Shown: positions 1 through 61,947 of the stretch, piece by piece
How the letters are laid out: every line of letters starts with the position of its first letter
How positions within the stretch are numbered: position 1 is the stretch's first letter
Made by a program: the position numbers and the translations under genes
Notes under the pieces: model-generated
What the model was told of the DNA's origin: nothing
Database searches by the model: none
What the model saw: only the letters and a program-made list of their open reading frames with translations
From: Pocillopora damicornis
Lineage: Eukaryota
Direction of reading: 5' to 3'
Length of the DNA: 64,000 bases
Assembly (NCBI RefSeq): GCF_003704095.1
Contig: NW_020846461.1
Coordinates: 310,001 to 374,000, forward strand

Positions 1-960
1 CAGCTACAGTAACCTAGGAACTTTGTTCCAATCACTCTGTCAATATCACAAGGCCCGTGAATATCAGGAGAAAGCACTCGCTATCAATAAAGAAATTGGT
101 GACAGGAATAGAGAAGCAACAAGCTACGGAAACCTAGGAACTTTGTTCCAGTTACTCGGTCAATATGACAAGGCCCGAAGATATCAGGAGAAAGCACTCG
201 CTATCAGTATAGAAATTGGTGACAGGAATGGAGAAGCAACAAGCTACGGAAACCTAGGAACTTTGTTCCAATCACTCTGTCAATATCACAAGGCCCGAGA
301 ATATCTGGAGAAAGCACTCGCTATCAAAGAAGAATTGGGTGACAGGAATGGAGAAGCAAACAGCTGCGGAAACCTAGGAACTTTGTTACGTTCACTCTGT
401 CAATACGATAAGGCCCGAGAATATCAGGAGAGAGCACTCGCTATCAGAATAGAAATTGGTGACAGGAATGGAGAAGCAACCAGCTACGGAAACCTAGGAA
501 CTTTGTTCCAATCACTCTGTCAATACGACAAGGCCCGAGAATATCAGGAGAAAGCACTCGCCATCATGATAGAAATATGTAACAGGAATGGAGAAGCATT
601 AATCTACGGAAACCTAGGAAATTTGTTCCAATTACTTGGTCAATATGACAAGGCTCGAGAATATCAGGAGAAAGCACTTGCTATCAGTATAGAAATTGGT
701 GACAGGAATGGAGAGGCAACCAGCTGCAGAAACCTAGGAGCTTTGTTCCAATCACTCGGTCAATTTGACAAGGCCCAAGAATATCAGGAGGAAGCAATGG
801 CTGTCAAAATAGAAATTGGTGACAGGAATGGAGAAGCAATAAGCTACGGAAACTTAGGAATTTTATTCCAATTACTCGGTGAATATGACAAGGCCCGAGA
901 ATATCAGGAGAAAGCACTCGCTATCACAATAGAAACTGGTGACAGGAAAGGAAAAGGAAC
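1..960 (+). repeat. Coding tandem array of 8 near-identical 120-nt units (TPR repeats)
   Basis: AAC(C/T)TAGGA recurs at 11, 131, 251, 371, 491, 611, 731 and 851, an exact 120-nt period. Downstream TPRs (961-1400) are degenerate. Confidence 0.97.
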
Positions 961-2786
961 ATGCTATGAAATCCTCACGGATTTGTTTATCTCTCTTGGC
1001 AAGTATGCAAAGGCTGACGACTATCGAAAGAAAGCAATGGCAATTAGAAAGGGTATCGATGATAGATGCGGAGAAGCAGCAAATTACAGACAGCTTGGGC
1101 TAATTTCAGAAAAGTGTGGTGAATATGACAAGGCTCAAGAATATTACGAGAAAGCCCTTTCAATTCACATGAAAATCGGTAGGAAAGAAAGAATAGTAGT
1201 CAACTACAGCGATTTAGGAATGTGTTTCCTCACGCTTGGTAAATATGACATGGCCGAAGAATACCTTAAGCAGGCTCTCCTATTAAGTAGGGATATTGGA
1301 CAAAACTTGAACGAGTTTACCTGCCTTTTACAGCTATCGGTGTTAAATTTGTCACAAGGTCATCTTGAAGAGGCTTCTACGTATCTTTTTCAAGGCATCG
1401 AAAAGTTCGAAACTTTGAGGGGTTTTCTTAAAGAAAACGACCAGTTTCAAATATCTCTTTTAGAAAGGCACGGCACCTTTCCTTACAAGTCGTTCAGTGA
1501 GTTTCTTTCTTCCACTGGAAAGCCTCAAGACGCCCTTTACGTCGAAGAACTGAGTAGGGCAAGAGGCCTGGCCAACTTGATGGCAGCTCGGTACTCTATT
1601 CAAGAGCAGATCTCAAGCGATCCACAGTCTTGGAGTGGCATTCAAGGGATCATCACAAAAGAAGCAGACTGCGCATGCCTGTACATTTCGGTTGGTACAA
1701 ATGATGTACGGTTTTGGATATTTAAAGCAACGGGAGCTCTTCATTTTTCAAAAAAGAAAGTGAGCTTGGACAAAAACAGGATGACCGGAATAGTCCCTGA
1801 GTTGGATGAGTTTTTTAAAGAAGCCTTCCACACCCGCTCTATTTTACCCGAACAGAATTGCGAAGATCGATCTTTAGATGACACCGAACTGTTTCAAAAC
1901 AAGTCTTCACTTGTGTTACAAGATAATTATCGCTCCTGTGGCCCGTTTACTGAAGCAGCCCGAGATCATAATTGTCCCTGATTCCTGTGTGTACCAAGTG
2001 CCATTTGCAGCCTTGGCTGACGAAGGAGGCACGTATCTATCAGAGACATGCAGAATTCGGATAGTTCCCTCTCTGACGACTCTCAAGCTTATTGAAGACA
2101 GTCCTCCAGACTATCACAGTCAGACAGGGGCTCTCATAGTGGGTGACCCTGTGGTTGGAAAGGTGATTTACAAGGGAAAGTGCAGAAATATGAAACCATT
2201 GCCGTGTGCAAGAAAGGAAGCAGAGATGATTGGAAGACTTCTTGGCGTAACGCCTCTGATAGGACATTCCGCGACAAAGCATTCTGTACTCCAAGCGATA
2301 AATTCAGTGAGCCTGATACACATTGCTGCCCATGGATATCCCGAAAGAGGGGAGATTGCTCTTTCTCCCAAGCACCATTCCCCACTCCCACCTTTCCCTC
2401 AAGAAGAAGATTATCTTTTGACGATGGCCGATATTTCAAAAACTCGGTTGCGAGCTAAACTAGTGGTGCTTAGTTGTTGTCACAGTGCTCGTGGACAGAT
2501 TAGAACCGAGGGAGTTATTGGAATTGCCCGAGCGTTCTTAGGATCCGGAGCTCGTTCAGTATTAGCGGCACGATGTGCCCTGGATGACACAGCCACAGAG
2601 CAGTTCATGACTTGTTTCTACGAACATTTGTTCCGCGGTGAAAGCGCCAGTGAGTCTCTTCATAAGGCTAGGAAGTGGATGAGAAATAACGGCTTTGAGA
2701 AAGTTTCTCAATGGGCGCCATTTATGTTAATAGGCGACAACGTGACATTTGATTTTGGAAACTGGCTGGTGCCTAGCACACCTTAA
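2..2786 (+). CDS. TPR-repeat + CHAT (caspase-related clan CD) protease, TTC28-like; 5' end lies upstream of the window; one frame break at ~1878-1900
   Basis: Frame is open from position 2 (the ORF-track start at 23 is an internal TTG). It encodes 40-aa TPR repeats (GDRNGEATSYGNLGxLFQSLGQYDKAREYQEKALAI) and then DALYVEELSRARGL. The +1-frame ORF 1878-2786 has CHAT motifs IIVPD..VPFAAL, ALIVGDP, LPCARKEA, IHIAAHG (catalytic His), VVLSCCHS (catalytic Cys), ARAFLGSGARSVLA and WAPFMLIG. No introns evident. Confidence 0.9.
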
Positions 2787-4090
2787 GAGCCATAACTTTG
2801 ATGAAACCTCTGTAGCAGAATGAATTAGACTTAGTAAAGCTCGGAACTATTTAATTACTAGCCTGTAGAAAAAGGACGCCTTCTCAGTGCGAAGGACAAC
2901 GCGGATCGATACACAGTGGAAGGCATTTCTGTAAAATGCTCATCACACATCTAACTTTAATAATCTGAAACAAACCAGCGTATGGTGTTATCTCTTTATA
3001 AGAGTTCCGAAGTTAAAAAACTCCATTTTTGATAAGTCAATGGTTCAGTGAACGAGCCAAGAAAAGTGTAACAATTTTTAGATTTCGAACGTGATTAGTT
3101 CATCAAGGAAAGAAAACTTTTAATTCTTTTTCAAAGGCGATTAGTTAGTCAATTCAAGAGACTTTTAAACAAATGTGACTTGAAAAAAAGGTTTTTTCTA
3201 AGCGTAATTTTTTTGGAAATTTGTTGCAAAGCTTTTGACAAGAAATATTGTGATTCAACATGCCAAAATAAATAAATTTAAAGAAAAGAAAAAAGAGATA
3301 CACTTTTACAGTAATGCAAACCCTTGTATTCTCAGGGATACCCCTGTAATGTTATCAATTTAATCGATACCCCTATGCGTAGATACCGCTGTATCCTAGC
3401 ACAGACTCTTGTATGCTCATAGATACTTTTGTATATTTATTATCCTTCACTTTTGCACTGCCACTTCTATTTCGCTCCGTTTTATCAACTGAACACATGG
3501 AAAAGGTTACTTTATTATCAAAGAAAATTTTATGCATGGGAATTCTTTTTGTTGACCAAAAAACTCAATAGATTCTTCGTCTGTTACTTTTGTGCTATAT
3601 CTCCGGGTTACAGTACAATAAATATACAATGAAAACCGAAAGAATACGACAAAATTTACATGCGAGAAAAATAATTCATAAGACCGTTGAAATGTCTTTT
3701 AAATACACAAATACACATATGCAGTTTAGCAAGATAACTTTTCTAATACTTCAAAACACCGAATCAAAATACATTATCTAGCAAACTACAATGAAGACTA
3801 CTCAAAATTAAGGGGAAAATGTGACCCTCAAGTAAAACCACTGAATAATTCTTAAGAGAAATAAAATGTAAAGTGATTGGCAGCCAGAAGAAAAAATATT
3901 CATCAGATGTAGGGAATCGCTGAAATGGTTGAAACTGACATATTAAATGTGGCTTATTGAACACCTTAGCTTTGAACTAATGAGTGCGTATTTTTTAAAC
4001 GAGTTGTCATCAGAATTTGTCCCACTTTGAGCTCAAAACAGCGTTAGAATGCAATGTGAACTGTGTGACATGAAAACTTGACTCGTTGTC
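2787..4090. repeat. Shared intergenic spacer of the TPR-CHAT/P450 module (reference copy)
   Basis: Homologous sequence recurs at 6475-8326 (reverse), 8427-9213, 13959-15962 (reverse) and 19350-20440. Confidence 0.9.
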
Positions 4091-4097
4091 GTAGTTG

Positions 4098-5960
4098 AAG
4101 ACCCCTCTCATGAACAGCTCCACATTCTCTGCCTCCGGTGGGCAAGAGATGTCAAACTGCTGCACGATTCTGACCATTAGCAGATGAAGCTCTAACTCGG
4201 CAATACGTCCACCGAGGAACATACGTGTTCCGAATCCAAATGGAAGAGAAGCGAAAGCTTCTGCCAATTCGATCAAAGTGGTATCTCCGGTTTGAACGCT
4301 TCGGCATCTTAAAAAATACTCTCATCTCGCCCCATTTGGTGAACAAGGAACTAAACTTGAACAGTGCCCCCAGGGATATAGAAGCCCCCCTACTATTATG
4401 TCTTCTTTCGGTCTTTGCGGGATAGCGGATAGAACAGGATATAGGCGGAGGGTCTCTTGTAACCAGGCCTTCAGGTATGGCATACGAGCGAGCGTTTCTG
4501 GCGTTGCAAAGGTAGAATTTCCAACCACAGAGAGCACTGTATGTATTGACATCTCCCATATATATAAATTAATTTTGTGGTGTATTGTTCAAGATCATCG
4601 GACATTACTGAAAGTTCGTTTAATTTCTCCTCCATGGAAACATGTTGTGCCTTGCAAGTTTCTACCGGATCTCCGACTCTCTGCTGTAGAGAGGCATAGT
4701 TTTTCTCCATCGCTTTTATCCTGTTCTTTAGGTCTTCGTTTTCCTTCACTATAGAGTCGACTGTGGTTTGTGTGAACTCGAGACTAGCTCGTAGCTCTTC
4801 ATAATTTCTTTTCAGGACTGTCTACTGTTCGAGCATTAGGCTGTTATTTGTTTCAATTCTCTTAAGCGCTTCACAAATCGTCGCCAATGTTAAATCCTGT
4901 GCTCGTTTTTCGTTAGGTTGACTGCCACGTGGAGTGGCCTAAAATGCCGCTGAGTTTTCTTCGTTAAGTCGCTTTGCGTTTGGTGAATTTGTAGATTCTT
5001 CGCCACTGGCACTACTAAGATCACTCCTCTTACGTATTGTTTTCTCTCAGGGAGCCACAGAGCTCAAAAAAGTGCGTCCGCCATGTGCAACCATGCACTT
5101 GTCCCAGTCCTGTTTCCTTTGATGGCTTGCACGACTTCTCCTCCAGTTCCTTGATTCTTCTCCCGATAAATAGCTTGGCGTAATCGTACATCGTGTCAAA
5201 ATTATCGAAAAACTTTTTAAATTTCTGGGTCTCGTAGATCTTGTAAAACCAAGTAAGCAAAAAAACCGACCTCGACCGCATGCGCCAGAAAATCTCCGAG
5301 GGCTTTTATGAATGTCTGTGCCTCTTCGTTGATTTCCTCCACAAGACAACTAAACCTTGTCAAACAATATCTCCGCCACAGACTCAAACGACCATTTGAA
5401 AAGTTCATTATCGAGTTCACTAACTTCGTTTTCTTTGTCTGACCCACCAGGCTCTCGAACTAATCGTAATCGGTCAATAAAATCGCTGATAATTTTACTG
5501 AAACCCTGAGTGTAGCTGGCGACTTCTTTCGGTCGAAGCATTCAGGACGCTTCGTAGCTTACATCATTCTTCACCATTGACAAAGAAAACGCCAGGAATT
5601 TCATTCCTTATTTCCCGGTAGAAATTTAGAGATGGAAAGTCCATTCTCTCAGGATATTTGGGATCCGATCGAAGTAACTTTGCAACGTCGGCAGGATCGG
5701 ATAAACTAATAATTTCTACGCCTGGTAGTTTGTTGCGGAATACTTTCCCATATTTCTTGACATTTTCTGCTTGGATTTTGCTTTCCAAGGGGCTGACCTT
5801 TCGTTTCCACGAAAAAAATCCAAGCTGTTCCGAAAACTAGAAGACGGAGCGGACCTAGGATTTCTGAAAAATGTTTTGTTTTTGGTGCATCCTCGACTGA
5901 AATAGACGAAAGAGAACACATTGGTATCGATGGCAGAAAACCACGGAGACCATGGTGTAT
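4098..5960 (-). pseudogene. Intronless mitochondrial-clan cytochrome P450 pseudogene (copy A), interrupted by a LINE fragment
   Basis: Motifs KHFSEILGP, DPADVAKLLR, LRPKEV, FKWSFES, YLKAWLQETLRLYP and PFGFGTRMFLGGRIAELE (heme Cys changed to Phe) are spread over several frames. Confidence 0.92.
4539..5109 (-). mobile_element. Decayed 5' part of a LINE ORF1 (coiled coil ending in DDLEQY motif) inserted in P450 copy A
   Basis: P450 homology stops at 5110 and resumes at 4538. The insert translates with stops to ..KRLNEEN..YEELRASLEFTQ..KENEDLKNRIKAME..DDLEQYTTK, resembling the coiled coil plus LEQYxR start of L1/CR1/L2-type ORF1. Confidence 0.7.
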
Positions 5961-6295
5961 GAACTAAATAGTCCGAACAGATGAGATCGAGAGAGAGTGA
6001 TTACTTTTCATTCTAACAGTAAAGGCCATCTTAAAGAACTTCAGCTATCACTACGCAGCAGATCGAATGAATAACTCGCTCTGCTATGGAACCTGGCTTT
6101 GACGTAGCGAAGGTCTAATGAGAATGGTCACGCACTTCACAGCAGGGTTACATAAGTAGCTAGCTCAACAATTAATATTACATTAATAATACACTNNNNN
6201 NNNNNNNNNNNNNNNNNNNNNNNNNNNNNNNNNNNNNNNNNNNNNNNNNNNNNNNNNNNNNNNNNNNNNNNNNNNNNNNNNNNNNNNNNNNNNNN

Positions 6296-6474
6296 GAACA
6301 CGTATGTGCCTCGGTCGACGTATTGCCGAGTTAGAGCTTCATCTGCTGATGGCCAGAATCGTGCAGCAGTTTGACATCTCTTACCCACCTGAGGCAGAGA
6401 ATGTGGAACCGTTCATGAGAGGTGTTACCATTCCTGACAGACCTGTTAGAGTGCAGTTTGTTGACAGAAAATGA
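6296..6474 (+). pseudogene. P450 3' fragment (copy B); 5' part lost in gap
   Basis: TRMCLGRRIAELELHLLMARIVQQFDISYPPEAENVEPFMRGVTIPDRPVRVQFVDRK-stop. Heme Cys is intact, so it could belong to a functional gene hidden in the gap. Confidence 0.85.
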
Positions 6475-7920: not shown

Positions 7921-9213
7921 TTAAATTAATAAAACTACTGGGGTATCTATGAGAATACAATGGTTTGTATTACTATACGATTAAGAGGATCCTTTTTTTC
8001 TTTTTTTTTTAATGTGTTTATTTTGGCATGTTAAACCACAATATTTTTTGTCAAAAGCCTTGCAAGAAATTTCCAAAAATTTAAGCTCAGAAAAAACTTA
8101 TTTTTCAAGTCACACATTTGTTTAAAAGTCTCTTGAGTTGACTAGCTAATTACCTTTGAAAAAGGATTAAAAATTTTCTTTCCTCGAAGAACTAATCGCG
8201 TTCGAAACCTAAAAATTGTCACACTTTCTTGGGTTGTTTACTGAACTAAAAACTTAAAAAATAAATTGGAGTTTTTTAACTTCGTAACTCTTATAAAGAG
8301 ATAACACTATACGCTGTCTTGTTTCANNNNNNNNNNNNNNNNNNNNNNNNNNNNNNNNNNNNNNNNNNNNNNNNNNNNNNNNNNNNNNNNNNNNNNNNNN
8401 NNNNNNNNNNNNNNNNNNNNNNNNNNTACTGATCTTAGGGTGTAAAGGATTAATCGATACCCTTTGCGTAGGTACCGTTGTATCCTCATACAGACTCTCG
8501 TATGCTTATAGTTACTTTTGTATACTCATTATCCTTCACTTTCGCTCTGCCGCTACTATTTCCCCCCGTTTTATCAACTGAATGCCTGGAAAAGGTTACT
8601 TTAATATCAAAGGAAAATTTATGCAGGGGATTGCATTTTTTGACCAAAAAGACTCGACAGATTTTTCGTTTGCTACTTTTGTGCCATATCTGTGAGTTAC
8701 AATGAAAACCGAAAGAATAAGAAATATATTTGTATTCAACAAAAATTTGCATGCGAAAAAAATAGTTCATTAGACCGTTGAAATGTATTAGAAATGCACA
8801 AATATATACATAAGTCTTGGCTTTAGTCTATCCTTGCGGTAAAGTGCTCGATGCGTTCGCGGAGCGTGGTATATCTGAAGGTTGAGCTAATCAATAAGAC
8901 AACTTTTCTGTGACTCTGAGTTTCACGCTTACGCGATCATATACTATATTGATAAGAATACAGAAATTATTAACGAGAAGATGTGACCTTCAAGTAACAC
9001 CATTGAATAATTCTGAAGAGAATTAAAATGTAAAGTGATTGGCAGCTAGAAGACAAAATTATTCATCAGATGTAGGGAATCACTGAAATGGTTGAAACTG
9101 ACTTATTAAATGTGACTTTTTGAACACCTTCGATCCAATAAGTGTGGATTGTTTAAACAAGTTGTCATCAGAATTTGTCCCACTTTCAGCTAAAAACAGT
9201 GTTACAGTGCAAT

Positions 9214-9445
9214 TTAAACGTGGCAACATGAAAACCTAACTGATTTTCTGTCGACAAACCGCACTCTAACAGGTCTGTCGGGAATGGTGACCCCTCTCAT
9301 GAACGGCTCCACATTCTCTACCTCCGGTGGGTAAGAGAAGTCAAACTGCTGCACGATTCTGGCCATCAGCAAATGGAGCTCTAACTCGGCAATACGTCGA
9401 CCGAGGCACATTCTTGTTCCGAATCCAAATGGAAGAGAAGCGAAA
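9214..9445 (-). pseudogene. P450 3' fragment (copy C1)
   Basis: PFGFGTRMCLGRRIAELE...VRFVDRK, with the stop codon changed to TCA. Fused 5' to unrelated sequence at 9446. Confidence 0.88.
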
Positions 9446-10086
9446 TAAGATGATAATGACTTCTTTGTCTTAAGTCCACTTCAAAATCAGATTATCAGTT
9501 ACGTGTTCGAGGTGACTAATACACTGATCTTTCTTGATGACTGCGCTGCTTCGATAGATGTGTACCAATAATTTTTTTGACCCGGCATTTAGCTCTCAGC
9601 ATAAGATCCAGAGAAATCATGGTTCGGGTCCTCGCACAGCAGATGATAAGCATCGTAAAACCATCCAGAGAGAACATCACTGAATTAGTTCTCTTCTGCA
9701 CACTATCATCTGAAGACATGAGGATTATATTTGAGAATTACACAGGCGACTTTAAATCTGATGAGCAGAACGAATTAATGTCTGAGCTTAAGCGAGTAAG
9801 TTATTCACATCTCATATTCTCACTTCGTCATTCTTATAGTATTCATCTTGAAGTAATTCAATGAAAATATTTGCATTTCTTTCTAATAAAATGGAAATCA
9901 TTGAACATGATTAAGAAGCTGTTAAAGATGTTATTAAAACTTTCGAGGCCGAACCCTCAAGTGATTCAGATCATCCAGAGCAACTCNNNNNNNNNNNNNN
10001 NNNNNNNNNNNNNNNNNNNNNNNNNNNNNNNNNNNNNNNNNNNNNNNNNNNNNNNNNNNNNNNNNNNNNNNNNNNNNNNNNNNNNN

Positions 10087-10898: not shown

Positions 10899-12016
10899 CC
10901 ATGTCAAGGTGAATAAAAAAGGTCTGGGGTTACAATCCTCTTGGGAAAATAAGTTCTTTCTTTGTCCCACCCCTGTTACACGACGGATAAAATCTGAAAA
11001 AAACTTTGTCGCACGCATGGTTCACACAAAATTCACCCCCTGATGAAAATGCACAACTATATCAGGGTTTCAAGGTAAAAAAACTGATCAATCAAGCAAT
11101 ATACACGATCAGTGAAATAGAGTTTACATACCTGCTGGGCTGGCTGCGACTAAAAACTCGGCAACAGGGTCTTGCTCGGCCTGAACAAAGAATCAGACCA
11201 TCATGCAACAGAATGTTAAACAAACAACAACAACAAGAGTTAAAAGCAGCAACATTTCCGTACAATGTGAAACCAACACTCTGGCTCACTAAGAATAGAC
11301 CCTTTTTTTTCTCAAGCAGAGAGTTTCACCCTCTCCTTTTGCATCAACTATGGGCTTCCAAAACAACAGAAAAACGCAAAACAAAGACAAAATACAAAAT
11401 AATACGTAAAAAAACTGGAGAGGAAAAATGTCCACTGTTACCAATGTCATTTAAACAATACCTACTGGAGTTACATTTCTCTTCGGTATTCCGTAAACTT
11501 CCTAAAACCAAAACAAGGCAAAAAATACCCCAGTGATAGCGCGTTAGACTCTGGCCTAAAGGGTCCGAGTTCTAGCTTGTCAATCGCGCGTGTTACAAAC
11601 GATCACACCAGCCAGTAACTCGCTGTGTTTTAAAAACATATTACTTTTCTGGTAAGGTTCAAAACAGAATAGCAAATTAACAGGATACCCATAATTGAAT
11701 GAGCTTTGCGTTCAAAAATTCTCANNNNNNNNNNNNNNNNNNNNNNNNNNNNNNNNNNNNNNNNNNNNNNNNNNNNNNNNNNNNNNNNNNNNNNNNNNNN
11801 NNNNNNNNNNNNNNNNNNNNNNNNTGATCAGTTTTTTTACCTTGAAACCCTGATATAGTTGTGCATTTTCATCAGGGGATGAATTTTGTGTGAACCATGT
11901 GTGCAACAAAGTTTTTTTCAGATTTTATTCGTCGTGTCACAGGGGTGGGACAAAGAAAGAACTTATTTTCCCAAGAGGATTGTAACCCCAGACCTTTTTC
12001 ATTCACCTTGACATGG
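10899..12016. mobile_element. Long (>=190 nt) imperfect inverted repeat, possibly the TIRs of a DNA transposon, spanning a gap
   Basis: 10899-11090 (CCATGTCAAGGTGAA...AAACTGATCA) is the reverse complement of 11825-12016, with several mismatches. Confidence 0.65.
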
Positions 12017-12380: not shown

Positions 12381-12933
12381 TGGGCCTTTATTGTTACCAG
12401 TAAAAATCCCTGAAGAAGTCTACGACAGTTAAACGAAACACGTTGGAGAGTAAAACAAGTCTCAGAATAACCGTTCGCAGAGCGCTGCTCGCTGTTTGAA
12501 CGTTAAAAAAAATAGTCTTGTCCGTGAAAGAAAAAAAACTACAGTAACGCACACACACAAGAAGAAAATAAAACATCTCTAACGATCGCAAAGACACAAG
12601 CTGCGAACTTTTTTATCAAAAGCACAAACCAAATTTAGGGCCCAAAGAATTGATAAAAACTGCAAACCGCTACAATCGCAGGATCCGCCAATCCGTTAAT
12701 ATTTCGCTCTGAATACGAAATGCAAAATGCGGGAAAACACATTGTCTAAAACTCTAGCTCTCCCCATCCTTCTCTGTAAACCTCAAAGAGCACTGAGCAC
12801 TCGCTTGCCAAAATTACGCTTGCTCTACAGGCTACCATTCCTAGAGTGACTTTTATAATGAAAGCTACTTAGCAATATTTTCATTTGTGGCAAAGTTATT
12901 TCGATCGAACATCAACTATCCAGAGAGAGTGTG

Positions 12934-13958
12934 CTTTCCGTCTCTAAATTTCTACCGGGAAAAAAGGAAGAAAATTGCTGGCGCATTTTTCGCCGATGGG
13001 GAAGAATGGTAGAAGCTACGAAGCGTCCTGAGCAAAAGAATGCTTCGACTGAAGAAGTCGCCGACTATACTCCGGATTTCAATAAAATTATCGGCAATTT
13101 TAGTCACCGATTACGACCAGTTCGAGAGCCTGGTGGGTCAGAGAGAGAAAACAAAGTTTTTGAAATCGATAATGAACTTTCCAAATGGTCGTTTGGGTCT
13201 GTGGCGGAGATGTTGTTTGACAAAAGGTTTGGATGTCTTGAAGAGGAAATCAACAAAGAGGCACAGACCTTCATTAAAGCCGTCGGAGATTTTCTGGCGA
13301 ATGCGGTCGAGGTCGGTTTTTTGCCTTCTTGGTTTGACAAGATCTACGTGAACCAGAAACGTATAAAGTTTTTCGAAAATTTTGACACAATGTACGATTA
13401 GGCCGAACTATTCATCGGGAGTAAAGTCAAGGAACTTGAGAAGTCATGCAAGCCATCGAAGGAAACAGAGCGTGACCGAGCTGGCTTCTTCAAGTTCCTC
13501 CTGGCCGGCGGAAAGCTGACGAAGGATGACTTGTCGGCCAACGCAAGCGATGTTCTGTTTGCCGGAGTTAACACAACTACCTGAAGGCCTGGTTACGTAA
13601 GACCCTCCGCCTATATCCTGTTCTCTCCTCTATCCCGCGAAAACCGAAAGAAGACGTAATATTAGGGGGCTACCATATCCCTGGGGTCACTGCTCAAGTG
13701 GAATTCCTTGCTCACCAAATAGGGCGAGATGAGAGTATTTTTGAAGATGCCGAAGCGTTTAAACCAGAGAGATGATTGCAAAACACGTATGTGCCTCGGT
13801 CGACGTATTGCCGAGTAAGAGCTCCATCTGCTGATGGCCAGAATCGTGCAGCAGTTTGACATCTCTCACACACCGGAGGCAGAGAATGTGGAGCCGTTCA
13901 TGAGAGGGTCACCATTCATAACAGACCTGTTAGAGTGCAGTTTGTTGACAGAAAATGA
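12934..13958 (+). pseudogene. P450 pseudogene (copy D)
   Basis: TAG at 13399-13401. Same internal deletion as C2 (GTTAACACAACTACCTGAAGG). An extra deletion removes the PFGFG part of the heme loop. Confidence 0.92.
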
Positions 13959-15178
13959 GTCAGGTTTTCATGTCATCAAGTTCACACTTCATTGTAACAC
14001 TGTTTTGAGCTGAGAGTGTGACAAATTCTGATGACAACTCGTTTAAAAAAACCGCACTAATTAGATCGAGGGTGTTCAATAAGTCACATTTAATAAGTCA
14101 GTTTCAACCATTTCAGTGATTCCTTACATCTGATGAATAATTTTCTCTTCTGGCTGCCAATCACTTTACATTTTATTTTTCTTTAGAATTATTTAGTGGT
14201 TTTACTTGAAGGTCACATCTTCCCGTTAATAAATCTGTGTATTCTTAACACTAGTTCATTAGATAATGTATTTGATTCGGTATTTTGAAGTACTAGTAAA
14301 GTTAACTTGCTAAACTGCATATTTCAAATTCATTTCAACGGTCTTATGAACTATTTTCCTCGCACGCAAATTTTTGTTGCATATGAATGTATTTCGTATT
14401 CTTTTGGTTTTCAGTATATAATTATTGTCTTGTAACACGTAGATATGGCACTAAAGTAGCTGACGAAGAATCTGTTGAGTTTCTCTGGCCAAAGAAAAGT
14501 ATTCCCCTAGACAAATTTTCGTTGATAACAAAGTAACCTTTTCCAGGCGTTCAGTTGATACAACGGAGCGAAATAGTAGCGATAGAGCGAAAGTGAAGGG
14601 TAATGAGTACACAAAAGTATCTAAGAGCATACAAGAGCCTCTGAGGATACAATGGTATCTACGCATAGGGGTATCCATTAATCCTTTACACCTTAAGATC
14701 AGTATGCATATTCTCCATACTGTTTTCCATTAATTTCCTAAGGTGCTGACAAGGAGATTCTGCTTTACAATCAAGAGCTCCTGTACTTGTTNNNNNNNNN
14801 NNNNNNNNNNNNNNNNNNNNNNNNNNNNNNNNNNNNNNNNNNNNNNNNNNNNNNNNNNNNNNNNNNNNNNNNNNNNNNNNNNNNNNNNNNNCGTATTCTT
14901 TTGGTTTTCAGTAGGTGCTTAATGTCTTGTTACACGTAGATATGGTACTAAAGTAGCAGACGAAGAATCTGTTGAGTTTCTCTGGCCAAAGAAAAGTATT
15001 CCCCTAGACAAATTTTCATTGATAACAAAGTAACCTTTTCCAGGCGTTCAGTTGATACAACGGAGCGAAATAGTAGCGATAGAGCGAAAGTGAAGGGTAA
15101 GGAGTACACAAAAGTATCTAAGAGCATACAAGAGCCTGCGAGGATACAATGGTATCTACGCATAGGGGTATCCATGAA

Positions 15179-15962: not shown

Positions 15963-17050
15963 TAAGGTGCGCTAGGCGTTATTTCTCATCCACTTCCTGG
16001 CCTTGTGGAGAGATTCACTGGCGCCTGCACCGCGGAACAAATGTTTGTAGAAAAAATTCATGAACTGCACTGTGGCAGTGTCATCCAGGGCCCATCGGGC
16101 CATCGGAACGCTCGGGCAATGCCGATAACTCCCTCGGTTGTAATCTGTCTACGAGCACTGTGGCAACAACTAATCACCACTAGTTTAGCTCGCAACCGAG
16201 TTTTTGAAATATCCGCCATCGCTAAAAGATAATCTTCTTCTGGAGGAAAAGGTGGGAGAAGGGTAGGGTGCTTAGGAGAAAGAGTAATCTCCCCTCTTTC
16301 GGCATCACCTTGTGTAGCAATGTGCATCAGGCTCACTGAATTTATCGCTTGGAGTACAGAATGCTTTGTCGCAGAATGTCCTATCAAAGGTGTTATGACA
16401 AGAAGTCTTCAAATCATCTCTGCTTCCTTTCTTACACACGATAATTGTTCAATATTTCTGCACCTTCCCTTGTAAATCACCTTTCCAACCACAGGGTCAC
16501 CCACTATCAGTGCCCCGGTCCGACTGTGATAGTCTGGAGGACTGTCTTGAACAAGCTTTAGAGTCGTCAGAGAAGGAACTAGTCGAATCCTGCATGTCTC
16601 TGATAAATACTTGCCTTCTTCATCAGCCAAGGCTGCAAATGGCACTTGGTACACACAGGAATCAGGGACAGTTATGATTTCGGGCTGCTTGAGTTAACTG
16701 GCCAAAGGAGCGATGATTATCTTATAACACAAGTGAAGACTTCTTTTGAAACATTTGGATCGATCCTCGCAATTCTGTTCGGGTAAAATGGCGCGGCTGC
16801 GGGAGGCTTCTTTAAAAAACTCATCCAACTCAGGGACTATACCGGTCACCTTGTTTTTGTCCAGGCTCACTTCCTTTCTGAAAATTGAATGGCTCCCGTT
16901 GCTTGAATTATCCAAAACCGTACATCATTTTGACCAACCCAAATGTACAGGCATGCGCAGTCTGCTTCTTTTGTGATGATCTCTTGAATGCCACATCAAG
17001 ATTTTGGGTCACTTGAGATCTGTTCTTTAACAGAGTACCGAGCTGCTTCC
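15963..17050 (-). pseudogene. TPR-CHAT pseudogene (copy 2), CHAT region
   Basis: Paralog of 1580-2786 with stops, frameshifts and deletions. Catalytic HG is changed to QG (HIATQG). Runs into the gap. Confidence 0.92.
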
Positions 17051-17150
17051 NNNNNNNNNNNNNNNNNNNNNNNNNNNNNNNNNNNNNNNNNNNNNNNNNN
17101 NNNNNNNNNNNNNNNNNNNNNNNNNNNNNNNNNNNNNNNNNNNNNNNNNN

Positions 17151-18917: not shown

Positions 18918-19017
18918 NNNNNNNNNNNNNNNNNNNNNNNNNNNNNNNNNNNNNNNNNNNNNNNNNNNNNNNNNNNNNNNNNNNNNNNNNNNNNNNNNNN
19001 NNNNNNNNNNNNNNNNN

Positions 19018-20458: not shown

Positions 20459-20590
20459 GGAGGTCTATGTATTGATTTGTCTGTTTTACAGTGCTCGATA
20501 CATAGAAGTAGGGCGTTATATATGTTGCCATAGGGAAAAAAAACAGAGAGACTATACTTTCATCCCTACAAGCCCTATTTCATTCCTATT

Positions 20591-21232
20591 TTTGGCCAAC
20601 ATATAAAGAACCCATTGCATCGTGTTGGACGTAGTGTCAACTCCGGCGAACAGAACATCGATTACGCTCGCCAACAGGTCATCCTTCATGAACTTTCCGC
20701 TGGCCAGGAGGAACTCGAAGAAGCCGGCTCGGTCGCGCTCTGTTTCCTCTGATGGCTTGCATGAATTCTCCGCCAGTTCGTTGATTCTTCTCTCGATAAA
20801 TAATTCGGCGTAATAATACATCGTGTCAAAATTATCGACAAAATTTTTAAATTTCTGGGTCACGTAGGTCTTGTAAAACCAAGTAGGCAAAAAACCGACT
20901 TCGACCGCGTTCGCCAGAAAATCTCCGACGGCTTTTATGAAGGTCTGTGCCTCTCTGTTGATTTCCTCTTCAAGACAACCAAACCTTTTGTCAAACAACA
21001 TCTCCGCCACAGACTCAAACGACCATTTGAAAAGTTCATTATCAAGTTCACAAACTTCGTTTTCTTTCTCTGACCCACTAGGTTCTCGAACTGATCGTCA
21101 TCGGTGAATAAAATCGCTCATAATTTTATTGAAATCCGGAGTATAGTCGGCGACTTCTTTCGGTCGAAGCATTCTTTTGCTCAGGACGCTTCGTAGCTTG
21201 TACCATTCTTCACCATCGGCAAAAAAAACACT
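20591..21232 (-). pseudogene. P450 internal fragment (copy F), truncated at both ends
   Basis: Open stretch FDKRFGCL...DVLFAGVDTTSNTMQWVLYMLAKN. Homology ends abruptly at both ends within one contig. Confidence 0.9.
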
Positions 21233-43300: not shown

Positions 43301-46300
43301 ACTTTCTTATTAATGTCCTACATAGCCCAAAAAATCTCTCATTGGTTGTTATTATTTCTCCATTGTTTCACATTTATTTCTTGAGGTCTTTCCTCTTAAA
43401 GCAAGCTTCTTATGGGCTAAAATTTTGATTTTAGCTGCACCTGAGCCAGTAGTAAACCACCTGCAAGTTCCTGCTCAAAGAAATCCTGCTCAAAGAAATC
43501 CAGCTCAAAGAAATCCTTCATCAAAAGCAGTGGTAAGTTTTTAAATGTTTCATTGTACCTGTATATATCAAATGCAATTATTTTCTATCTTGTTAAGCTA
43601 CTGTCTATAACAGATACATGTATTTGTTTCCTTTCAGATCAGTGTGTGGCTGATTTATACTTACAGTAATTACTCAAATGAGTGCCACCCTCTCATAATT
43701 GCTTCCCTTAAATAAATGCCTCATTTGAGATGGAAAAAGCTAGATAGAGTCAGTAGCCTGGAGTTAATTATACTGTGTTTATGATGAATTATCATGATGA
43801 GTCACAAATTTTGTATTTTGTCACTGTCATTTGTGTTCAGGTACCAAGAGGTGTTGCAACTCCTGTAAGACCAACAGAAAGACTTCCAGAAACACCAATG
43901 AAACCTCGGTTATCTCTAAGACCAGAAGGATTTCTTAGTAACCAAGTTCACTGGAATGAAGAACAACCATATCCATTTCCTGGATCTAGCAGGGTCAGAA
44001 AATTACGTCATGTTGGTTATGTCGCCTGGGCATGTTTTATTCTTATAGCACTCTTAAAACAAGCTCATCAAAGGCAGCTGAGTGCCACTGAAAACCTCAA
44101 CAGTCTTATAAAACAAGCAATTGATGAACTTCATAGAGAATACTACCTCAGCCATGACTGGTCCATGTACTCTACCATTCAAGATGCTATTACAGATGAA
44201 GCCTTTGATTTTTACATAAAAAATCCAGGTGTTTTTCAGAGACTTTCAAAGGATTCTCAAAGTGCCTTTAAAGAACTCTCATCCATGGTTGAGACCATTA
44301 TTCATAATGTTATTCAGATTAAACCTGATACTGGAATTTTAAGTGCTTCAAGAGAGGGTGTCTTGTGGCTTATGACTCAGGAAGGTGTCTTTCTACCACC
44401 AAACTACCTGTGGCAAGTTGAAAAGGTATTTGAAAGAGGACCCTTTAGTGAAGTTTAATTCACAAAGGCAATTGAGACAGAGGTTGAAGGCTACATGTAA
44501 ATATTTCCTTTATTGTTCAGTTTGTATTTCTGACCTACCTCCCCCCAGCCTGGGTGCCAGTGTCTTGTATAGACATAGCAAGTTTAAGTCATATGAATTT
44601 ATAAGAATTACAAGGGGAGGGGTTAGTATTATTTAGGTGAGGAGCAAAATTAATAATGGTAATAAACCAAGTGGAGTCCAATTTGGTCTGTAATCTTACA
44701 AGTGTTTAAGAAAATTGGATCAAATGAATTGGATGACACAAAGTCCTGTTACCAATCAATCATAACCATTACAATTCCATAAAAAATACAATTAGGGAAA
44801 ATATTTCTCGTGGAGACAATGTCTTCAGTAAAGAATTCCTCCATTTTTTTTAAATTCCCCAGTTTTTATGGTTACTATGATTAATTCTGTGGTTGGTGGA
44901 TTTGGCTGAGTGGACTTAATATGATTGGCTGCTTTAACTGTCCAATTACAGGTTTTCAACTAAAACTGTTTGATTACAACACTACACTTATAATTAGTGA
45001 AAAATAAAGCAGCCAATGCACCAATAATCACATTTGATGAAATTGTAATGGTTATAATCAGTCAAAGTTTTTGTCCATTTAACTGATTACTAGACAGGAG
45101 TAACAATCCTTGAGTCACTTTGTTAACCCTCTGACCCCTATGAGTGAGTCTAGCATGTAATTTCTCCATACAATATCACTCCTGAATCACACAGTAAGGT
45201 CATGAGAATAAAGGAAATGATCACCAACCAGAGAAACTCTTGATTGTTCAAAAAATTCCCCTTGCTTGTACCTTAGGCAATGTATAGAGAACGGTTTGGA
45301 GATTATGCATGTTACGTAAGGGTGTAAAGGGTTAAAGGTAATCATCGTCCAGTAAAAGTTGTCAGTACCAGTGACAAATTTTTTATTTAATGGTGAATAT
45401 CTTGGGTTAAAGGGTTAAATCAGGTTCAGTTTTTCAATAAAAACACAATTACATCTTATTCTGAGCCTGTTATCTTTAATGCTGATTTATAGGATAGCAT
45501 GATGTTCACTGACCAAGGTGCTTTAACTAAAGTGACCAATGAAGTGATCACCATGTTACTGCTGGGCTTGTTTATCTCAAGAGGACTGGTATCTACACTG
45601 CTGTTCAAGCCTACTGAGTATGGACTAATGGATAATACACCCAGTGGTCTGGCACAGTCTAACCTCAAGGTACATGTTTATACAGTGTACCTGAAGATAT
45701 ATTTTTATAATCAATGAAATAATTAGTAGACACAGTAATCAGTATACAGAAATAACCAGTATTCACATTTGCCCTGAAAGCTTCACTTCCTTGCCAAATA
45801 TTCTTTTTTTGGACAATCTCTCAAACGTAAACATAATCAGCCAACAAACATGTGGTCAGAAGAATATTTTCACACCAAATGGAGGCGACTGTTTATATAT
45901 ATTCAAGGTTATCAGATCACAAGTCATGGAGTGTTTTATTGTATTCATGAACAAATATTTGATGAGTGATTGCAAACCAAAATTGTCTTCAGCAGTAATT
46001 CTTGGTGTGGATGAAATTTCATTGTGCTTTTCAGGTCTTGGGAACCATTCTCATGAAAATTGTCCGTGATGTCTCATTAAAGAATAGTAGGAAAGTAATG
46101 GTAAGTTTAACCTGGTGGTCAGTTTTATTATATGGTATNNNNNNNNNNNNNNNNNNNNNNNNNNNNNNNNNNNNNNNNNNNNNNNNNNNNNNNNNNNNNN
46201 NNNNNNNNNNNNNNNNNNNNNNNNNNNNNNNNNNNNNNCATGTCAATCATTAACAACATAACTATTTCTTTGTAGCCTGTAGCCTCAGAGATCAGCTCAC

Positions 46301-59800: not shown

Positions 59801-61947
59801 GCCTTTGTGTCTCACCATCTATCAGGACATCAATTCAAGGACAAATCATACCTTCACAATTGCTTTGATTCAGCACAGCTAAAATTTACTTCACAAAACT
59901 GTACAAGATATTTTTATATTTCAGTACTTCAATTTAAGACTAATATTGCACCATTTGTGGCTGAGTGAATTTCCTGATCCTTAGATGAAAATTTCTGGTA
60001 GAAATACAGTACGTGTTCACCGAGGGTTAACATACCTGAACATCTGGAGAAATACACTCCAATGCTTTCTGTATGACGCGACATCCATACATTTGTAAGG
60101 CAAGAGGCAGCACATGTCCCCGAATGCAGTTGGCAAGGTGATGCTTCTGTTCAGGACTCCCAAACTCAAAGAACTTCTGTATAACATAGTTTCCAAACAC
60201 ATCAGTCATCAAGCTGTAAGCAGCTGGGAGGATTTCATGAAAAACCATCTGCTTTTCAGTAGGAGAAGCACGTTCTAATTTTTGCTGGATAAATCTTGAA
60301 CCATGTTGGTCCTGTGAGAATTCCACAATGTGATTTGCCAAGTCACGCAGCTGGATGTTGGGATAGCGATTATTACGGAAGTCTTCTAAAAGCCTACTTC
60401 TCCCTGTTTCTTTACCTCTTGATCCTCTAAAGCTACCAACACCTAAAGCTGAGCTGCCATATTGCATTCCACCTAGTCCACCAAGTGATCCCTGATATTT
60501 TGTAGGAGTATCTCTGGGAGCAGCTGCAAGTTGCATGTAACGAGAGAGTCCATTGGATAAGGGGCTTCCTACAGTGAAGCCTGACTGTCCGCCATATGCT
60601 GACTGACCACCAAACCCTGACTGTCCCTGTGAAAGAAGAGGAGGTGTTGGCAGCTCCTGGGGAGTATTGTAAGATGGTTGTGCTGAGATTGACAAACTTG
60701 CAAGGCTGCTTACAGCACCCGGGGTTGTATAGTACTGGGTGATTCCTGCCCGTTTGCCATATTCAGTAGCATTCATAGAATCTCTTCTAGTTCCTCCACC
60801 TGGAATGGTACCAACAGCCCCAACTCCAGACGAGCCTCCCACAACACCTCCCAGCATACCCAGAGCACTGCTATTCAATTGTGGCTGTTGCTGCTGTTGT
60901 CCAAACAGCCCTAATGTTGACGCACCACCCATTGAGCTGGCATTTCCCAGTCGTCCTCCAGTGACAGAATTGGCACCTGCATTCTGGGCATTTACCACTA
61001 CTGGTGATACCATTCTGAGGGCTCCCATCTGACTAGCTGCCATTTGTGCTGTTGCCATATTGTTAACATTTTGTGTATTCCCTAGCACCAAGTTCCCAGA
61101 CTGATCATAGTAAGCAGTAGTTCCTAGTCCCAAAGGGGCTGCCCCAGCTGGAGCTACTAGCTGGTAGTTAGTTCCAGAAGATGCAGCAGCCATTGCCTGT
61201 TGCTGGTGTGATGGCGGAGTCCCAATAATCTCCACCTGTCCCTGCATAGGCCGTCCAGTCATCCCACCCGAGTTAGAGCGGAGCAGCTGAGCATGCTGTT
61301 GTTGTTGTTGCTGTTGTTGCTGTTGAAGGTATCCTCCTGTACCTGATGCTCCAGCTGCAGAATACACACCCCATGGTTGAACACTATAAGCTGCATATTG
61401 AGGATGGACCACCTGATGGGCACCGCCACTGACTGCAGCAAGTGAAGGATTACCATATGGATCTTGGGATGGTGGTGCTGTGATGAAGTATGGGTTTGGA
61501 TGGCCAATACCAGTGGATTGCAAGCCAGACTGCAATCCAAGTTGTTGCTGTTGTTGTTGCTGTTGCTGTTGTTGCTGTTGTTGAGCAGCCATTGCTAATG
61601 CCAACTGATGTTGTGTCAAGTGAAGTGACTGACCATGCTGAGAGGGAGCATTATGGCTTTGTAAAGATGCTCCAGAGACCATAACAAAATCTGATGGACT
61701 TGTAGGAGTACCCACCACAGGCTCTCTCTGGGGTGCAAATGAAAGTTGCTCCAGTGGTACACTTTCCAGAGGATCTATTAATGCCACAGGCGTGACAATA
61801 TCTTCCATAGCATCAGACTGTTTGAAGGGTTTGGCTTTGTTCTGACCCACTGGTTGCTGTGTGGGCAGCTGTGTTTGGGTGGTCTGCTGAGCATCTTGAT
61901 GTTGAGGGCCTGAAGTAGGAGATGGTTGTCTACTGCCAGGAGTTCGG
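56864..61947 (-). CDS. PUM: Pumilio homolog (PUF RNA-binding protein); 5' exons upstream or outside the window
   Basis: Exons 60036-61947, 59093-59230, 58251-58498, 57931-58014, 56864-57095. PUM-HD: [95 protein letters not shown]. Confidence 0.97.
61297..61583 (-). repeat. Two CAA/CAG polyglutamine tracts in the Pumilio low-complexity N-terminal region
   Basis: Gln runs at ~61297-61325 and ~61541-61583. Confidence 0.9.

What the first reader, a model, noticed from the sequence alone, without database searches (positions are those of the whole stretch)
1..960. Near-identical 120-nt TPR repeats with codon-specific variability, upstream of a CHAT protease with an intact catalytic dyad
Seen: eight TPR units are highly similar at the DNA level, but changes cluster at a few codons and are mostly non-synonymous. 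The codon after AI/AV reads AAT/AGT/AAA/AGA/ATG/AGT/AAA/ACA (N,S,K,R,M,S,K,T). The codon after EA reads T,T,N,T,L,T,I. The NLG+1 position reads T,T,T,T,T,N,A,I. S/L-L-C/G and H/D alternate in a mosaic. The CHAT His (AAHG) and Cys (LSCC) are both present. Established: homogenised repeats with hypervariable positions mark ligand-binding arrays of fungal NLR/het receptors, and TPR-CHAT proteases act as sensor-activated proteases in bacterial defence (e.g. Csx29). Inference: this is a recombination-diversified sensor-protease immune family in a cnidarian, not a housekeeping TTC28 ortholog.
Basis: partly seen in the sequence, partly recalled or inferred. Interest (0 to 1): 0.75.

Follow-up and report, generated by a model that had tools for sequence, protein, structure and literature searches.

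The report
Frameshifted coral TPR-CHAT gene copy
This is the tail of one copy of a large, already published stony-coral gene family that joins a long array of helical repeats to a caspase-like protease; a few repeat positions do vary faster than silent sites, but in this copy the protease is out of frame.

Summary
The eight units are the last 8 of a 21-unit, 120-nt TPR array. Its single-exon gene starts 1,972 bases upstream of the window.

The units are 86% identical in DNA and 75% in protein, with silent divergence near 0.20. They are similar, not near-identical.

Variation is strongly clustered. Over 102 units from five paralogous arrays, overall dN/dS is 0.56. Three repeat positions carry 1.6 to 2 times more replacement than silent diversity, beyond neutral simulations: the codon after AI, NLG+1 and NLG+4.

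The CHAT domain is real. Its His and Cys align with the catalytic H862 and C907 of the solved DdvA structure.

In this copy a 50-nt deletion relative to intact paralogs puts CHAT in another frame, and the repeat frame stops at 1979-1981.

The genome holds at least 136 CHAT matches and a separate canonical TTC28 orthologue. The coral TPR-CHAT expansion is already published, and this scan met it repeatedly on other DNA of this genome. No nucleotide-binding (NOD) domain was detected, and an immune role is untested.

Verdict: an ordinary, probably decaying member of a known family.

The parts
1..949 (+). Last 8 homogeneous 120-nt (40-codon) TPR units of a 21-unit array: unit 14 cut by the window edge (1-109) and units 15-21 (110-949). 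The array starts at window -1570 and the gene's ATG lies at window -1972 (G000:C3096:308028).
   Evidence: TRF; ORF; register; Pfam TPR_12 E 3.4e-93
950..1429 (+). Four progressively diverged TPR-like units (22-25) that close the array
   Evidence: Register print; the same diverged tail is seen in paralogues L033, L034 and C1417
1430..1891 (+). Non-repeat linker between the array and CHAT, read in the TPR frame
   Evidence: only weak TPR matches; conserved in 123 relatives
1891..1892 (+). Deletion junction: 50 nt present in the intact paralogue L003 (53 nt in L004) are absent here, shifting the frame
   Evidence: Alignment A1; count; contigs with extra letters exactly here in 3 of 4 public runs, which may come from paralogues
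1979..1981 (+). TGA that ends the 1,317-codon TPR reading frame
1890..2786 (+). CHAT (caspase-like) protease domain, in a different reading frame from the array; stop TAA at 2784-2786
   Evidence: Pfam PF12770 E 9.7e-56 covering profile 5-289 of 289. AlphaFold model pLDDT 78.7, pTM 0.83. Foldseek: DdvA E 1.6e-8, separase, Craspase TPR-CHAT
2331..2333 (+). Catalytic His codon (CAT) of the AAHG motif
   Evidence: Aligns with H862 of DdvA 8rot (dyad named in PMC11506125); invariant in 28 of 28 aligned copies
2478..2480 (+). Catalytic Cys codon (TGT), the second C of LSCC
   Evidence: Aligns with C907 of DdvA 8rot; kept in at least 90% of 28 aligned copies
16097..16756 (-). Decayed second copy of the family's CHAT region (2 stops, His motif reads IATQG, larger deletion at the same junction)
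   Evidence: L022
19017..19337 (+). Third fragment of a family CHAT domain (residues 196-302 only), starting at an assembly gap
   Evidence: N run 18918-19017

Best explanation
The region is the 3' part of one single-exon member of the coral TPR-CHAT ('TTC28-like') family. The layout is a short helical head, 21 similar plus 4 diverged 40-residue TPR units, a linker, and a caspase-fold CHAT protease.

Shown. The family has over a hundred copies in this genome. Its CHAT domain is under purifying selection and keeps the His-Cys dyad. Its arrays differ in length and have turned over unit by unit since the genes duplicated. Structural repeat positions are strongly conserved. Three or four positions carry more replacement than silent diversity: columns 11 and 14 on the helix-A stripe that lines the TPR groove, column 33 in helix B, and more weakly column 4.

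Inferred. The array is a long solenoid whose variable positions set partner specificity. Partner binding would allosterically switch on the protease, as in separase, Craspase and DdvA.

This particular copy lacks 50 nt present in intact paralogues. As assembled, it can only give a 1,317-residue TPR protein without the protease. I read it as a young null allele or pseudogene (about 60%) inside a duplicated, decaying TPR-CHAT/P450 segment. The chance that the deletion is an assembly or haplotype artefact is about 25%.
For: Architecture.

Family size: 136 CHAT matches and 121 array matches.

Published family: passages of PMC12314368, PMC9145168 and PMC6208414.

CHAT constraint: dN/dS is 0.08-0.20 against older paralogues and 0.35-0.43 against the closest. 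His and the second Cys are both kept in 27 of 29 loci.

Fold and dyad.

Unit turnover.

Site pattern:
- Overall dN/dS is 0.56. Structural columns 9, 10, 22, 29 and 32 are at 0.15 or below.
- Replacement counts at columns 33, 14 and 11 are 2.25, 1.78 and 1.67 times the neutral simulation, reached by 0 of 240 simulations each.
- The tree-free piN/piS is 2.04, 1.98 and 1.58 for columns 11, 33 and 14. In 2 of 500 simulations any column reaches 2.04.
- The same columns are the most variable within 100 arrays of related coral proteins.

Frameshift.

Decaying neighbourhood: L022 has stops and has lost the His. Every P450 copy beside these genes has an open frame of only 58-128 codons.
Against: - No function has been tested for any member.
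- The focal units are only 75% identical in protein, with silent diversity 0.20, so recent homogenisation is weak here.
- The a-priori canonical groove set (TPR 2, 5, 9, 12, 13) has dN/dS of only 1.12 by simple counting (p 0.15).
- Silent changes are also unevenly spread (p 8.5e-11), so the uniform-mutation assumption behind the simulations is imperfect. Gene conversion among units can inflate tree-based counts.
- Column 33, the hottest, lies in helix B of a low-confidence model (pLDDT 57.8). I could not place it on the concave or the convex face.
- Both reading frames are otherwise free of stops over 1,317 and 302 codons. The assembly is gapped (eight 100-N runs in the window). The public runs neither confirmed nor excluded the deletion. 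An intact gene therefore remains possible. A short-read assembly may also have mis-ordered or collapsed units.
Confidence: 0.7

Rival explanations
1. The gene is intact in the animal. The 50-nt gap is an assembly or haplotype-collapse artefact in a multi-copy family, so a full TPR-CHAT protein of about 1,600 residues is made.
For: - No stop interrupts either frame apart from the shift.
- CHAT dN/dS against close paralogues (0.35-0.43) is no higher than among them.
- The assembly is scaffolded with many 100-N gaps.
- In 3 of 4 public runs, contigs carry extra letters exactly at 1891|1892, and one loose end matches the paralogue-type insert.
- RNA-library contigs identical to the window lie at 1640-1870 and 2339-2528.
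Against: - The assembled sequence has no gap or N at the junction.
- The undeleted contigs can equally come from paralogues such as L003 and L004, which share the flanks.
- Neighbouring copies of the same segment are clearly decayed.
- A neighbouring copy (L022) has its own deletion at the same place.
Confidence: 0.25
2. One reading: an active, recombination-diversified sensor-protease of coral innate immunity or allorecognition. Hypervariable TPR positions recognise non-self, and the CHAT protease executes the response.
For: - Excess replacement diversity at 3-4 positions per unit.
- Unit turnover and array lengths from 11 to more than 32 units.
- Close relatives with 90-93% internal protein identity that differ only at columns 4, 5, 14, 25, 33 and 40 (P0018 and P0019).
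- Dyad kept in 27 of 29 copies, while 8 of 9 canonical TTC28 sequences lack the Cys.
- The family sits in copy-number-variable, non-syntenic regions beside NACHT genes in Acropora (PMC12314368).
Against: - No experiment links any member to immunity.
- No NOD, Death, TIR or other signalling domain was found. The Death tag on P0018 is spurious.
- Variable groove positions are generic to TPR proteins (PMC1261162).
- Only 2 of 100 arrays reach 85% internal identity.
- This copy cannot make the fused protein as assembled.
Confidence: 0.3
3. The pattern is a neutral by-product. Tandem amplification of a TPR unit was followed by relaxed constraint on solvent-exposed residues in a family expanding by hitch-hiking, with no diversifying selection and no special recognition role.
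For: - Overall dN/dS is 0.5-0.8, so net purifying to relaxed.
- By simple counting only one column passes a Bonferroni test.
- Silent-site heterogeneity shows that mutation is not uniform.
- The family carries many dead copies.
- The published model allows neutral expansion and hitch-hiking (PMC12314368).
Against: - Neutrality predicts piN/piS near 1 at the freest sites, not 1.6-2.0 at three columns. The family-wise count is 2 of 500 simulations and 0 of 240 by tree counts.
- The same columns recur in all five arrays and in 100 related arrays.
- CHAT is clearly constrained.
Confidence: 0.2

Closest known systems
Coral TPR-CHAT domain-containing proteins (TPR-CHAT DCPs, 'TTC28-like'), Acropora, Montipora and Pocillopora (PMC12314368, PMC9145168, PMC6208414; passages read)
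   Same: N-terminal TPR_12-type array followed by one CHAT domain; hundreds of copies; tandem or segmental duplication; very variable TPR length; P450 genes co-expanding nearby. Named relatives of the focal gene are annotated this way in Pocillopora and Stylophora.
   Different: This copy has the two domains in different frames. In the passages and searches I saw, those papers do not give the per-codon hot spots, the unit turnover, or the contrast with TTC28's missing Cys. Supplements were closed.
Canonical TTC28 / TPRBK
   Same: 40-residue TPR units followed by a CHAT-like domain; probably the ancestor of the family (PMC9145168).
   Different: It is a separate gene in this genome (C3436). Its units are all diverged and it has one copy. 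The focal CHAT query matched it at only 30-39% identity. At the dyad Cys position, 8 of 9 TTC28 sequences examined (this genome's copy plus 8 named non-human ones) have no Cys, though all 9 keep the His.
Fungal NLRs with highly conserved TPR, ANK or WD repeats (Dyrka et al. 2014, PMC4986451; passages read)
   Same: Repeat arrays similar at DNA level; unit reshuffling; a few positions per repeat with excess replacement change; arrays of different length.
   Different: No NACHT or NB-ARC domain. Focal internal protein identity is 0.75, below their 85% criterion (2 of 100 related arrays pass). Repeat-number polymorphism between individuals was not tested. The effector is a CHAT protease C-terminal to the repeats.
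Bacterial and eukaryotic TPR-CHAT proteases: DdvA (8rot), Craspase Csx29 (7y84, 8eex), separase (5fc2, 5u1t)
   Same: CHAT/caspase fold with an aligned His-Cys dyad, preceded by a helical-repeat domain. In those systems the dyad is switched on allosterically (PMC11506125).
   Different: Sequence identity is only 12-22%. There is no CRISPR partner, no membrane anchor and no securin-type context. The array is far longer and more regular (25 units of 40 residues). Activation and substrates are unknown.

Membership tests
Coral TPR-CHAT DCP (TTC28-like) family | TPR (PF13424/PF13176) array N-terminal to a single CHAT (PF12770) domain in one protein | tested here: inconclusive
   Both domains are present and adjacent, in the order and spacing of intact paralogues. 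As assembled they lie in different frames.
Coral TPR-CHAT DCP (TTC28-like) family | Large lineage-specific expansion in scleractinian corals | tested here: met
   At least 136 CHAT matches in the own genome. 123 relatives were found, and every named one is from Pocillopora or Stylophora.
Canonical TTC28 | One-to-one orthology with bilaterian TTC28 | tested here: not met
   The orthologue is a different gene (C3436). Its best named hits outside corals are TTC28 of Nematostella (65%) and of bilaterians (42-48%). The focal CHAT query matched that gene at 30-39% identity.
CHAT / caspase-fold cysteine proteases (clan CD) | CHAT fold | tested here: met
   Pfam E 9.7e-56 over the full profile. Model pTM 0.83. 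Foldseek hits to DdvA, separase, Craspase, SAVED-CHAT, gingipain and MALT1, with 52 matches at E up to 0.001.
CHAT / caspase-fold cysteine proteases (clan CD) | Catalytic His-Cys dyad in place | tested here: met
   The His of AAHG and the second Cys of LSCC align with H862 and C907 of DdvA (residues named in PMC11506125).
CHAT / caspase-fold cysteine proteases (clan CD) | Proteolytic activity | not testable with these tools
   Needs expression of an intact paralogue with a Cys-to-Ala control.
NLR / STAND receptors (fungal het-type included) | Central NACHT or NB-ARC nucleotide-binding domain | tested here: not met
   Pfam finds only TPR families and CHAT in the C-terminal 659 residues, the N-terminal 141 residues and the linker. 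The stretch between them is the unit array.
Highly internally conserved repeat arrays (criterion of Dyrka 2014) | Over 85% protein identity between units over at least 100 residues | tested here: not met
   Focal mean is 0.747. Two of 100 related arrays pass: P0018 at 0.93 and P0019 at 0.90.
Highly internally conserved repeat arrays (criterion of Dyrka 2014) | Positive selection at a few positions on the binding face | tested here: inconclusive
   Columns 11, 14 and 33 exceed neutral simulations. Columns 11 and 14 are canonical groove positions TPR 9 and 12 (PMC1261162). The 3-D place of column 33 was not determined. No recombination-aware codon model was run.
Highly internally conserved repeat arrays (criterion of Dyrka 2014) | Repeat-number polymorphism among individuals | not tested
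   Only differences between paralogues were seen (11 to 32 or more units).

The most novel reading that the evidence does not exclude
Coral TPR-CHAT proteins are an NLR-independent family of cytosolic sensor-proteases. Partner specificity is written at three to five positions per 40-residue unit (columns 11, 14, 33 and 4) and is rewritten by unit gain, loss and exchange. They keep an active caspase-like dyad that the canonical TTC28 lineage has mostly lost. They would then be a protease-coupled recognition repertoire for pathogens, symbionts or allogeneic tissue, analogous to fungal het-type NLRs and bacterial Craspase.
Probability: 0.25. Interest if true: 0.7.

Novelty: new member of a known kind. 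Interest (0 to 1): 0.3.

Why it matters
The locus itself is ordinary: one probably broken copy of a family whose expansion in corals is already in print.

Three family-level results could matter.
- The same few repeat positions carry excess replacement diversity in all five arrays tested.
- Units turn over within genes.
- The expanded family keeps the catalytic Cys, which 8 of 9 canonical TTC28 sequences examined lack.

Together these make a testable case that corals evolved a variable-sensor, constant-protease repertoire outside the NLR family. That bears on coral disease, symbiosis and allorecognition. It would need biochemistry and population long-read data to stand.

Tried and rejected
- Death-domain link. 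One relative (P0018) carried a precomputed PF00531 tag. A direct Pfam scan shows no matched stretch, so it is a repeat artefact.
- Rescue of the frame by splicing or programmed frameshifting. The only GT..AG pair at the junction would be about 12 nt, and the shift is explained by the deletion seen against paralogues. Rejected.
- Read evidence for the deletion. All four runs are short Logan contigs with fixed differences from the window, so they are other individuals or paralogues. No listed contig bridges 1870-1941 in the window's form, and there are no indel rows. Inconclusive.
- Single-sequence AlphaFold model of seven units. Low confidence (pLDDT 57.8), used only for helix limits. No coordinates are returned, so the concave or convex face could not be computed.
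- First alignment of TTC28 C-termini. It took the wrong region and was discarded. It was redone on phmmer-located CHAT segments.
- Three-array counting test. No column passed Bonferroni. It was extended to five arrays and calibrated by neutral simulations.
- Positional orthology of units between close paralogues. Rejected by nearest-neighbour analysis.
- Rows dropped. Units touching masked N (p33a_04, p98_15, p98_16) and the diverged tail units were left out of all unit counts. In one search, only HMM-scored units of 25 bits or more and arrays of 6 or more units were used (100 of 120 proteins). In one search, 2 of 29 loci (L010, L022) were left out of alignment A2.
- Not in print. I found no per-codon selection analysis of coral TPR-CHAT arrays in searches or in the passages.
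Full report
**What is there**

Window 1-966 holds a 120-nt tandem repeat with 8.0 copies and 86% matches. It lies inside an open frame that runs off the 5' edge of the window. The window is G000:C3096:310001-374000, so I fetched the upstream DNA (L032).

- The frame starts at an ATG at window -1972 and runs for 1,317 codons to a TGA at 1979-1981.
- TRF finds 20.9 copies of the 120-nt unit there.
- In register the protein has a 134-residue helical head, 21 similar 40-residue units, four progressively diverged units, and a linker.
- Pfam finds TPR_12 (E 3.4e-93) and related TPR families only. In a second ORF (1878-2786) it finds a full-length CHAT domain (E 9.7e-56).

The array and the protease are in different frames. 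I aligned the junction with the closest paralogues. One of them (L003) is a single 1,272-codon open frame through this place. The focal copy lacks 50 nt present in L003, and 53 nt present in L004, exactly between 1891 and 1892. No other indel compensates, and no plausible intron restores the frame.

I laid four public runs (two probably DNA, two RNA libraries) on 1150-2900.
- All are short contigs with many fixed differences from the window.
- No indel row appeared.
- In three runs a contig has extra letters exactly at 1891|1892, and one loose end matches the paralogue-type insert. Such contigs can come from the paralogues themselves.
- RNA-library contigs identical to the window lie at 1640-1870 and 2339-2528. 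No listed contig bridges the junction in the window's form.

The deletion is therefore neither confirmed nor refuted by independent data.

Apart from the shift, both frames are free of stops, so the lesion is young or artefactual. The neighbourhood argues for decay.
- A second family copy at 16097-16756 has two stops, a lost His and its own deletion at the same junction.
- A third fragment begins at an assembly gap.
- The P450 copies that accompany these genes all have open frames of 58-128 codons.

**The family**

The own genome gives at least 136 matches to the CHAT domain, many inside single open frames of 1,000-2,160 codons. It gives 121 matches to seven units of the array.

The linker region finds 123 relatives. 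Every named one is from Pocillopora or Stylophora and is called 'tetratricopeptide repeat protein 28(-like)' or 'CHAT domain-containing protein'.

The expansion is published.
- PMC12314368 counts 276-362 'TPR-CHAT DCPs' in coral genomes, against one or two in most animals. It places them in copy-number-variable, non-syntenic regions and suggests that diverse TPRs widen partner range (passages).
- PMC9145168 separates a 'TTC28-like' expansion from a conserved canonical TTC28.
- PMC6208414 lists TPR proteins with CHAT among coral-diversified genes.

This scan's own notes show the same family reported on at least seven other pieces of this genome.

**Not the TTC28 orthologue**

A weak CHAT hit on contig C3436 lies in a frame of 1,586 or more codons with fully diverged 40-residue units. 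Its last 587 residues match Nematostella TTC28 at 65% and bilaterian TTC28 at 42-48% over 97-99% of the region. That gene is the orthologue, not the focal family.

I aligned its CHAT with eight named non-human TTC28 proteins. All nine keep the His. Eight of nine have no Cys at the dyad position; only the spider sequence keeps it. In contrast, 27 of 29 family loci in this genome keep both His and Cys.

**The protease**

phmmer against solved structures finds only DdvA (8rot, E 4e-5). The focal AAHG His and the second Cys of LSCC align with its residues 862 and 907. The authors name these as the catalytic dyad (PMC11506125, passages).

An AlphaFold model built on 28 family CHAT domains has pLDDT 78.7 and pTM 0.83. 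By Foldseek it matches DdvA (E 1.6e-8), separases, Craspase TPR-CHAT/Csx29, SAVED-CHAT, gingipains, MALT1 and caspases.

CHAT dN/dS is 0.08-0.20 against older paralogues and 0.35-0.43 against the five closest, at dS near 0.15.

**Are the repeats homogenised?**

- Mean unit identity within the focal array is 0.858 in DNA, hardly above the 0.849 against the closest paralogue's array.
- It is 0.747 in protein, and silent diversity among units is 0.199.
- This is below the 85% protein identity used for fungal NLRs (PMC4986451).
- Among 100 related coral arrays only two pass, at 0.93 and 0.90. These two differ almost only at columns 4, 5, 14, 25, 33 and 40.
- There is no positional orthology. The nearest unit is in the same array for 20 of 21 focal units. 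Over the three closest arrays this holds for 42 of 51 units, against a mean of 16.9 and a maximum of 28 in 2,000 label shuffles.

So units have been gained, lost or converted since the genes duplicated. The focal array is nevertheless not freshly homogenised.

**Is variation codon-specific and adaptive?**

I took 102 units from five arrays: focal 21, C1781 16, C984 14, C1417 19 and C967 32. Changes were counted on FastTree trees with codon parsimony.
- Overall dN/dS is 0.56 (focal 0.65).
- The replacement share is 63-74%, against 77-79% expected under neutrality.
- Replacement changes are very unevenly spread (p 6e-36).
- Structural columns L9, G10, A22, A29 and I32 have dN/dS of 0.15 or less.
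- Column 33 (the codon after AI) has 1.74 (p 6e-4), the only column passing Bonferroni. Column 11 (NLG+1) has 1.49, column 14 has 1.28 and column 4 (after EA) has 1.18.

Parsimony undercounts and codon make-up matters, so I simulated neutral evolution on the same trees. I used kappa 2.2 from the data and scaled the rates to reproduce the observed silent counts.
- Observed replacement counts are 2.25, 1.78 and 1.67 times neutral at columns 33, 14 and 11. None of 240 simulations reaches them.
- Column 4 is 1.49 times neutral (p about 0.02).
- The a-priori canonical groove set gives 140.5 observed against 99.0 ± 9.1, reached in 0 of 240 simulations.

A tree-free statistic is not inflated by recombination in expectation: per-column piN over array-wide piS, averaged over the five arrays.
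- Column 11: 2.04. Column 33: 1.98. Column 14: 1.58. Column 4: 1.47.
- These were reached in 1, 1, 0 and 7 of 500 simulations.
- Any column reaches 2.04 in 2 of 500 simulations.

Caveats:
- Silent changes are also heterogeneous (p 8.5e-11), so mutation is not uniform.
- The trees are uncertain.
- No recombination-aware codon model was available.
- The arrays come from a gapped assembly.

**Where the hot columns lie**

With N8-L9-G10 set to TPR positions 6-8, columns 4, 7, 11 and 14 are TPR positions 2, 5, 9 and 12. They form one i, i+3, i+7, i+10 stripe of helix A. Magliery and Regan found positions 2, 5, 9, 12, 13, 33 and 34 to be the most variable in TPRs in general and to line the concave, ligand-binding face (PMC1261162, passages). 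The pattern is thus what any TPR binding surface shows. Only the excess over silent change is unusual.

Column 33 lies in the long helix B of a low-confidence model. Its face could not be determined.

**Mechanism**

Shown:
- the architecture;
- an intact dyad in most copies, with constraint on CHAT;
- conserved structural repeat positions;
- a few fast-evolving, probably surface positions;
- unit turnover.

Inferred from separase, Craspase and DdvA, where the dyad rests inactive until a partner or signal realigns it: the array binds partners through its variable stripe and gates the protease.

Not shown: any ligand, substrate, activity or immune role. For this copy, as assembled, only a protease-less 1,317-residue TPR protein could be made.

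**Verdict**

The family is already known, so the locus is a new, probably decaying, member of a known kind.

Noticed in passing
G000:C3436 (locus L048:243-5000, minus strand); proteins P0125, P0130, P0131, P0136, P0144, P0152, P0158, P0194: The canonical TTC28 orthologue of this genome and 7 of 8 named non-human TTC28 proteins have no Cys at the CHAT dyad position, though all keep the His. Canonical TTC28 may be a pseudo-protease, unlike the coral expansion.
   Followed up: partly
window 4010-5800 (-), 6295-6438 (+), 9280-9456 (-), 13780-14028 (+), 12931-13401 (+), 20552-21010 (-): Several fragments of a mitochondrial-clan-like cytochrome P450 lie convergent to the TPR-CHAT copies. All have short open frames (58-128 codons). 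The copy at 4010-4276 reads FGFGTRMFLG, with Phe where the haem-binding Cys is expected (motif recalled). The same P450 fragment follows the close paralogues on contigs C1684 and C1766, so a two-gene segment was duplicated as a unit.
   Followed up: partly
protein P0018 (Pocillopora verrucosa, 1,061 aa) and P0019: Close relatives of the focal gene in a sister species have 11-12 units that are 90-93% identical in protein. They differ almost only at columns 4, 5, 14, 25, 33 and 40. This is a much cleaner case of a homogenised array with hypervariable positions than the focal one.
   Followed up: partly
window 60027-61850 (-): A long open frame with poly-Q runs ends in a Pumilio-repeat-like sequence, probably an exon of a Pumilio homologue. 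Named from the sequence by eye, not tested.
   Followed up: no
window 6196-6295, 8327-8426, 9987-10086, 11725-11824, 14792-14891, 17051-17150, 18918-19017, 46139-46238: There are eight runs of exactly 100 N. Seven of them fall within the 21 kb that hold the duplicated TPR-CHAT/P450 segments, so this part of the assembly is fragmented and copy order may be unreliable.
   Followed up: no
window 1850-1900 and the same place in L003, L004, L022 and P0018: The stretch just before the CHAT domain is indel-prone across the family. It is 50 and 53 nt longer in two paralogues, has a larger deletion in L022, and has a different, shorter peptide in P0018.
   Followed up: partly
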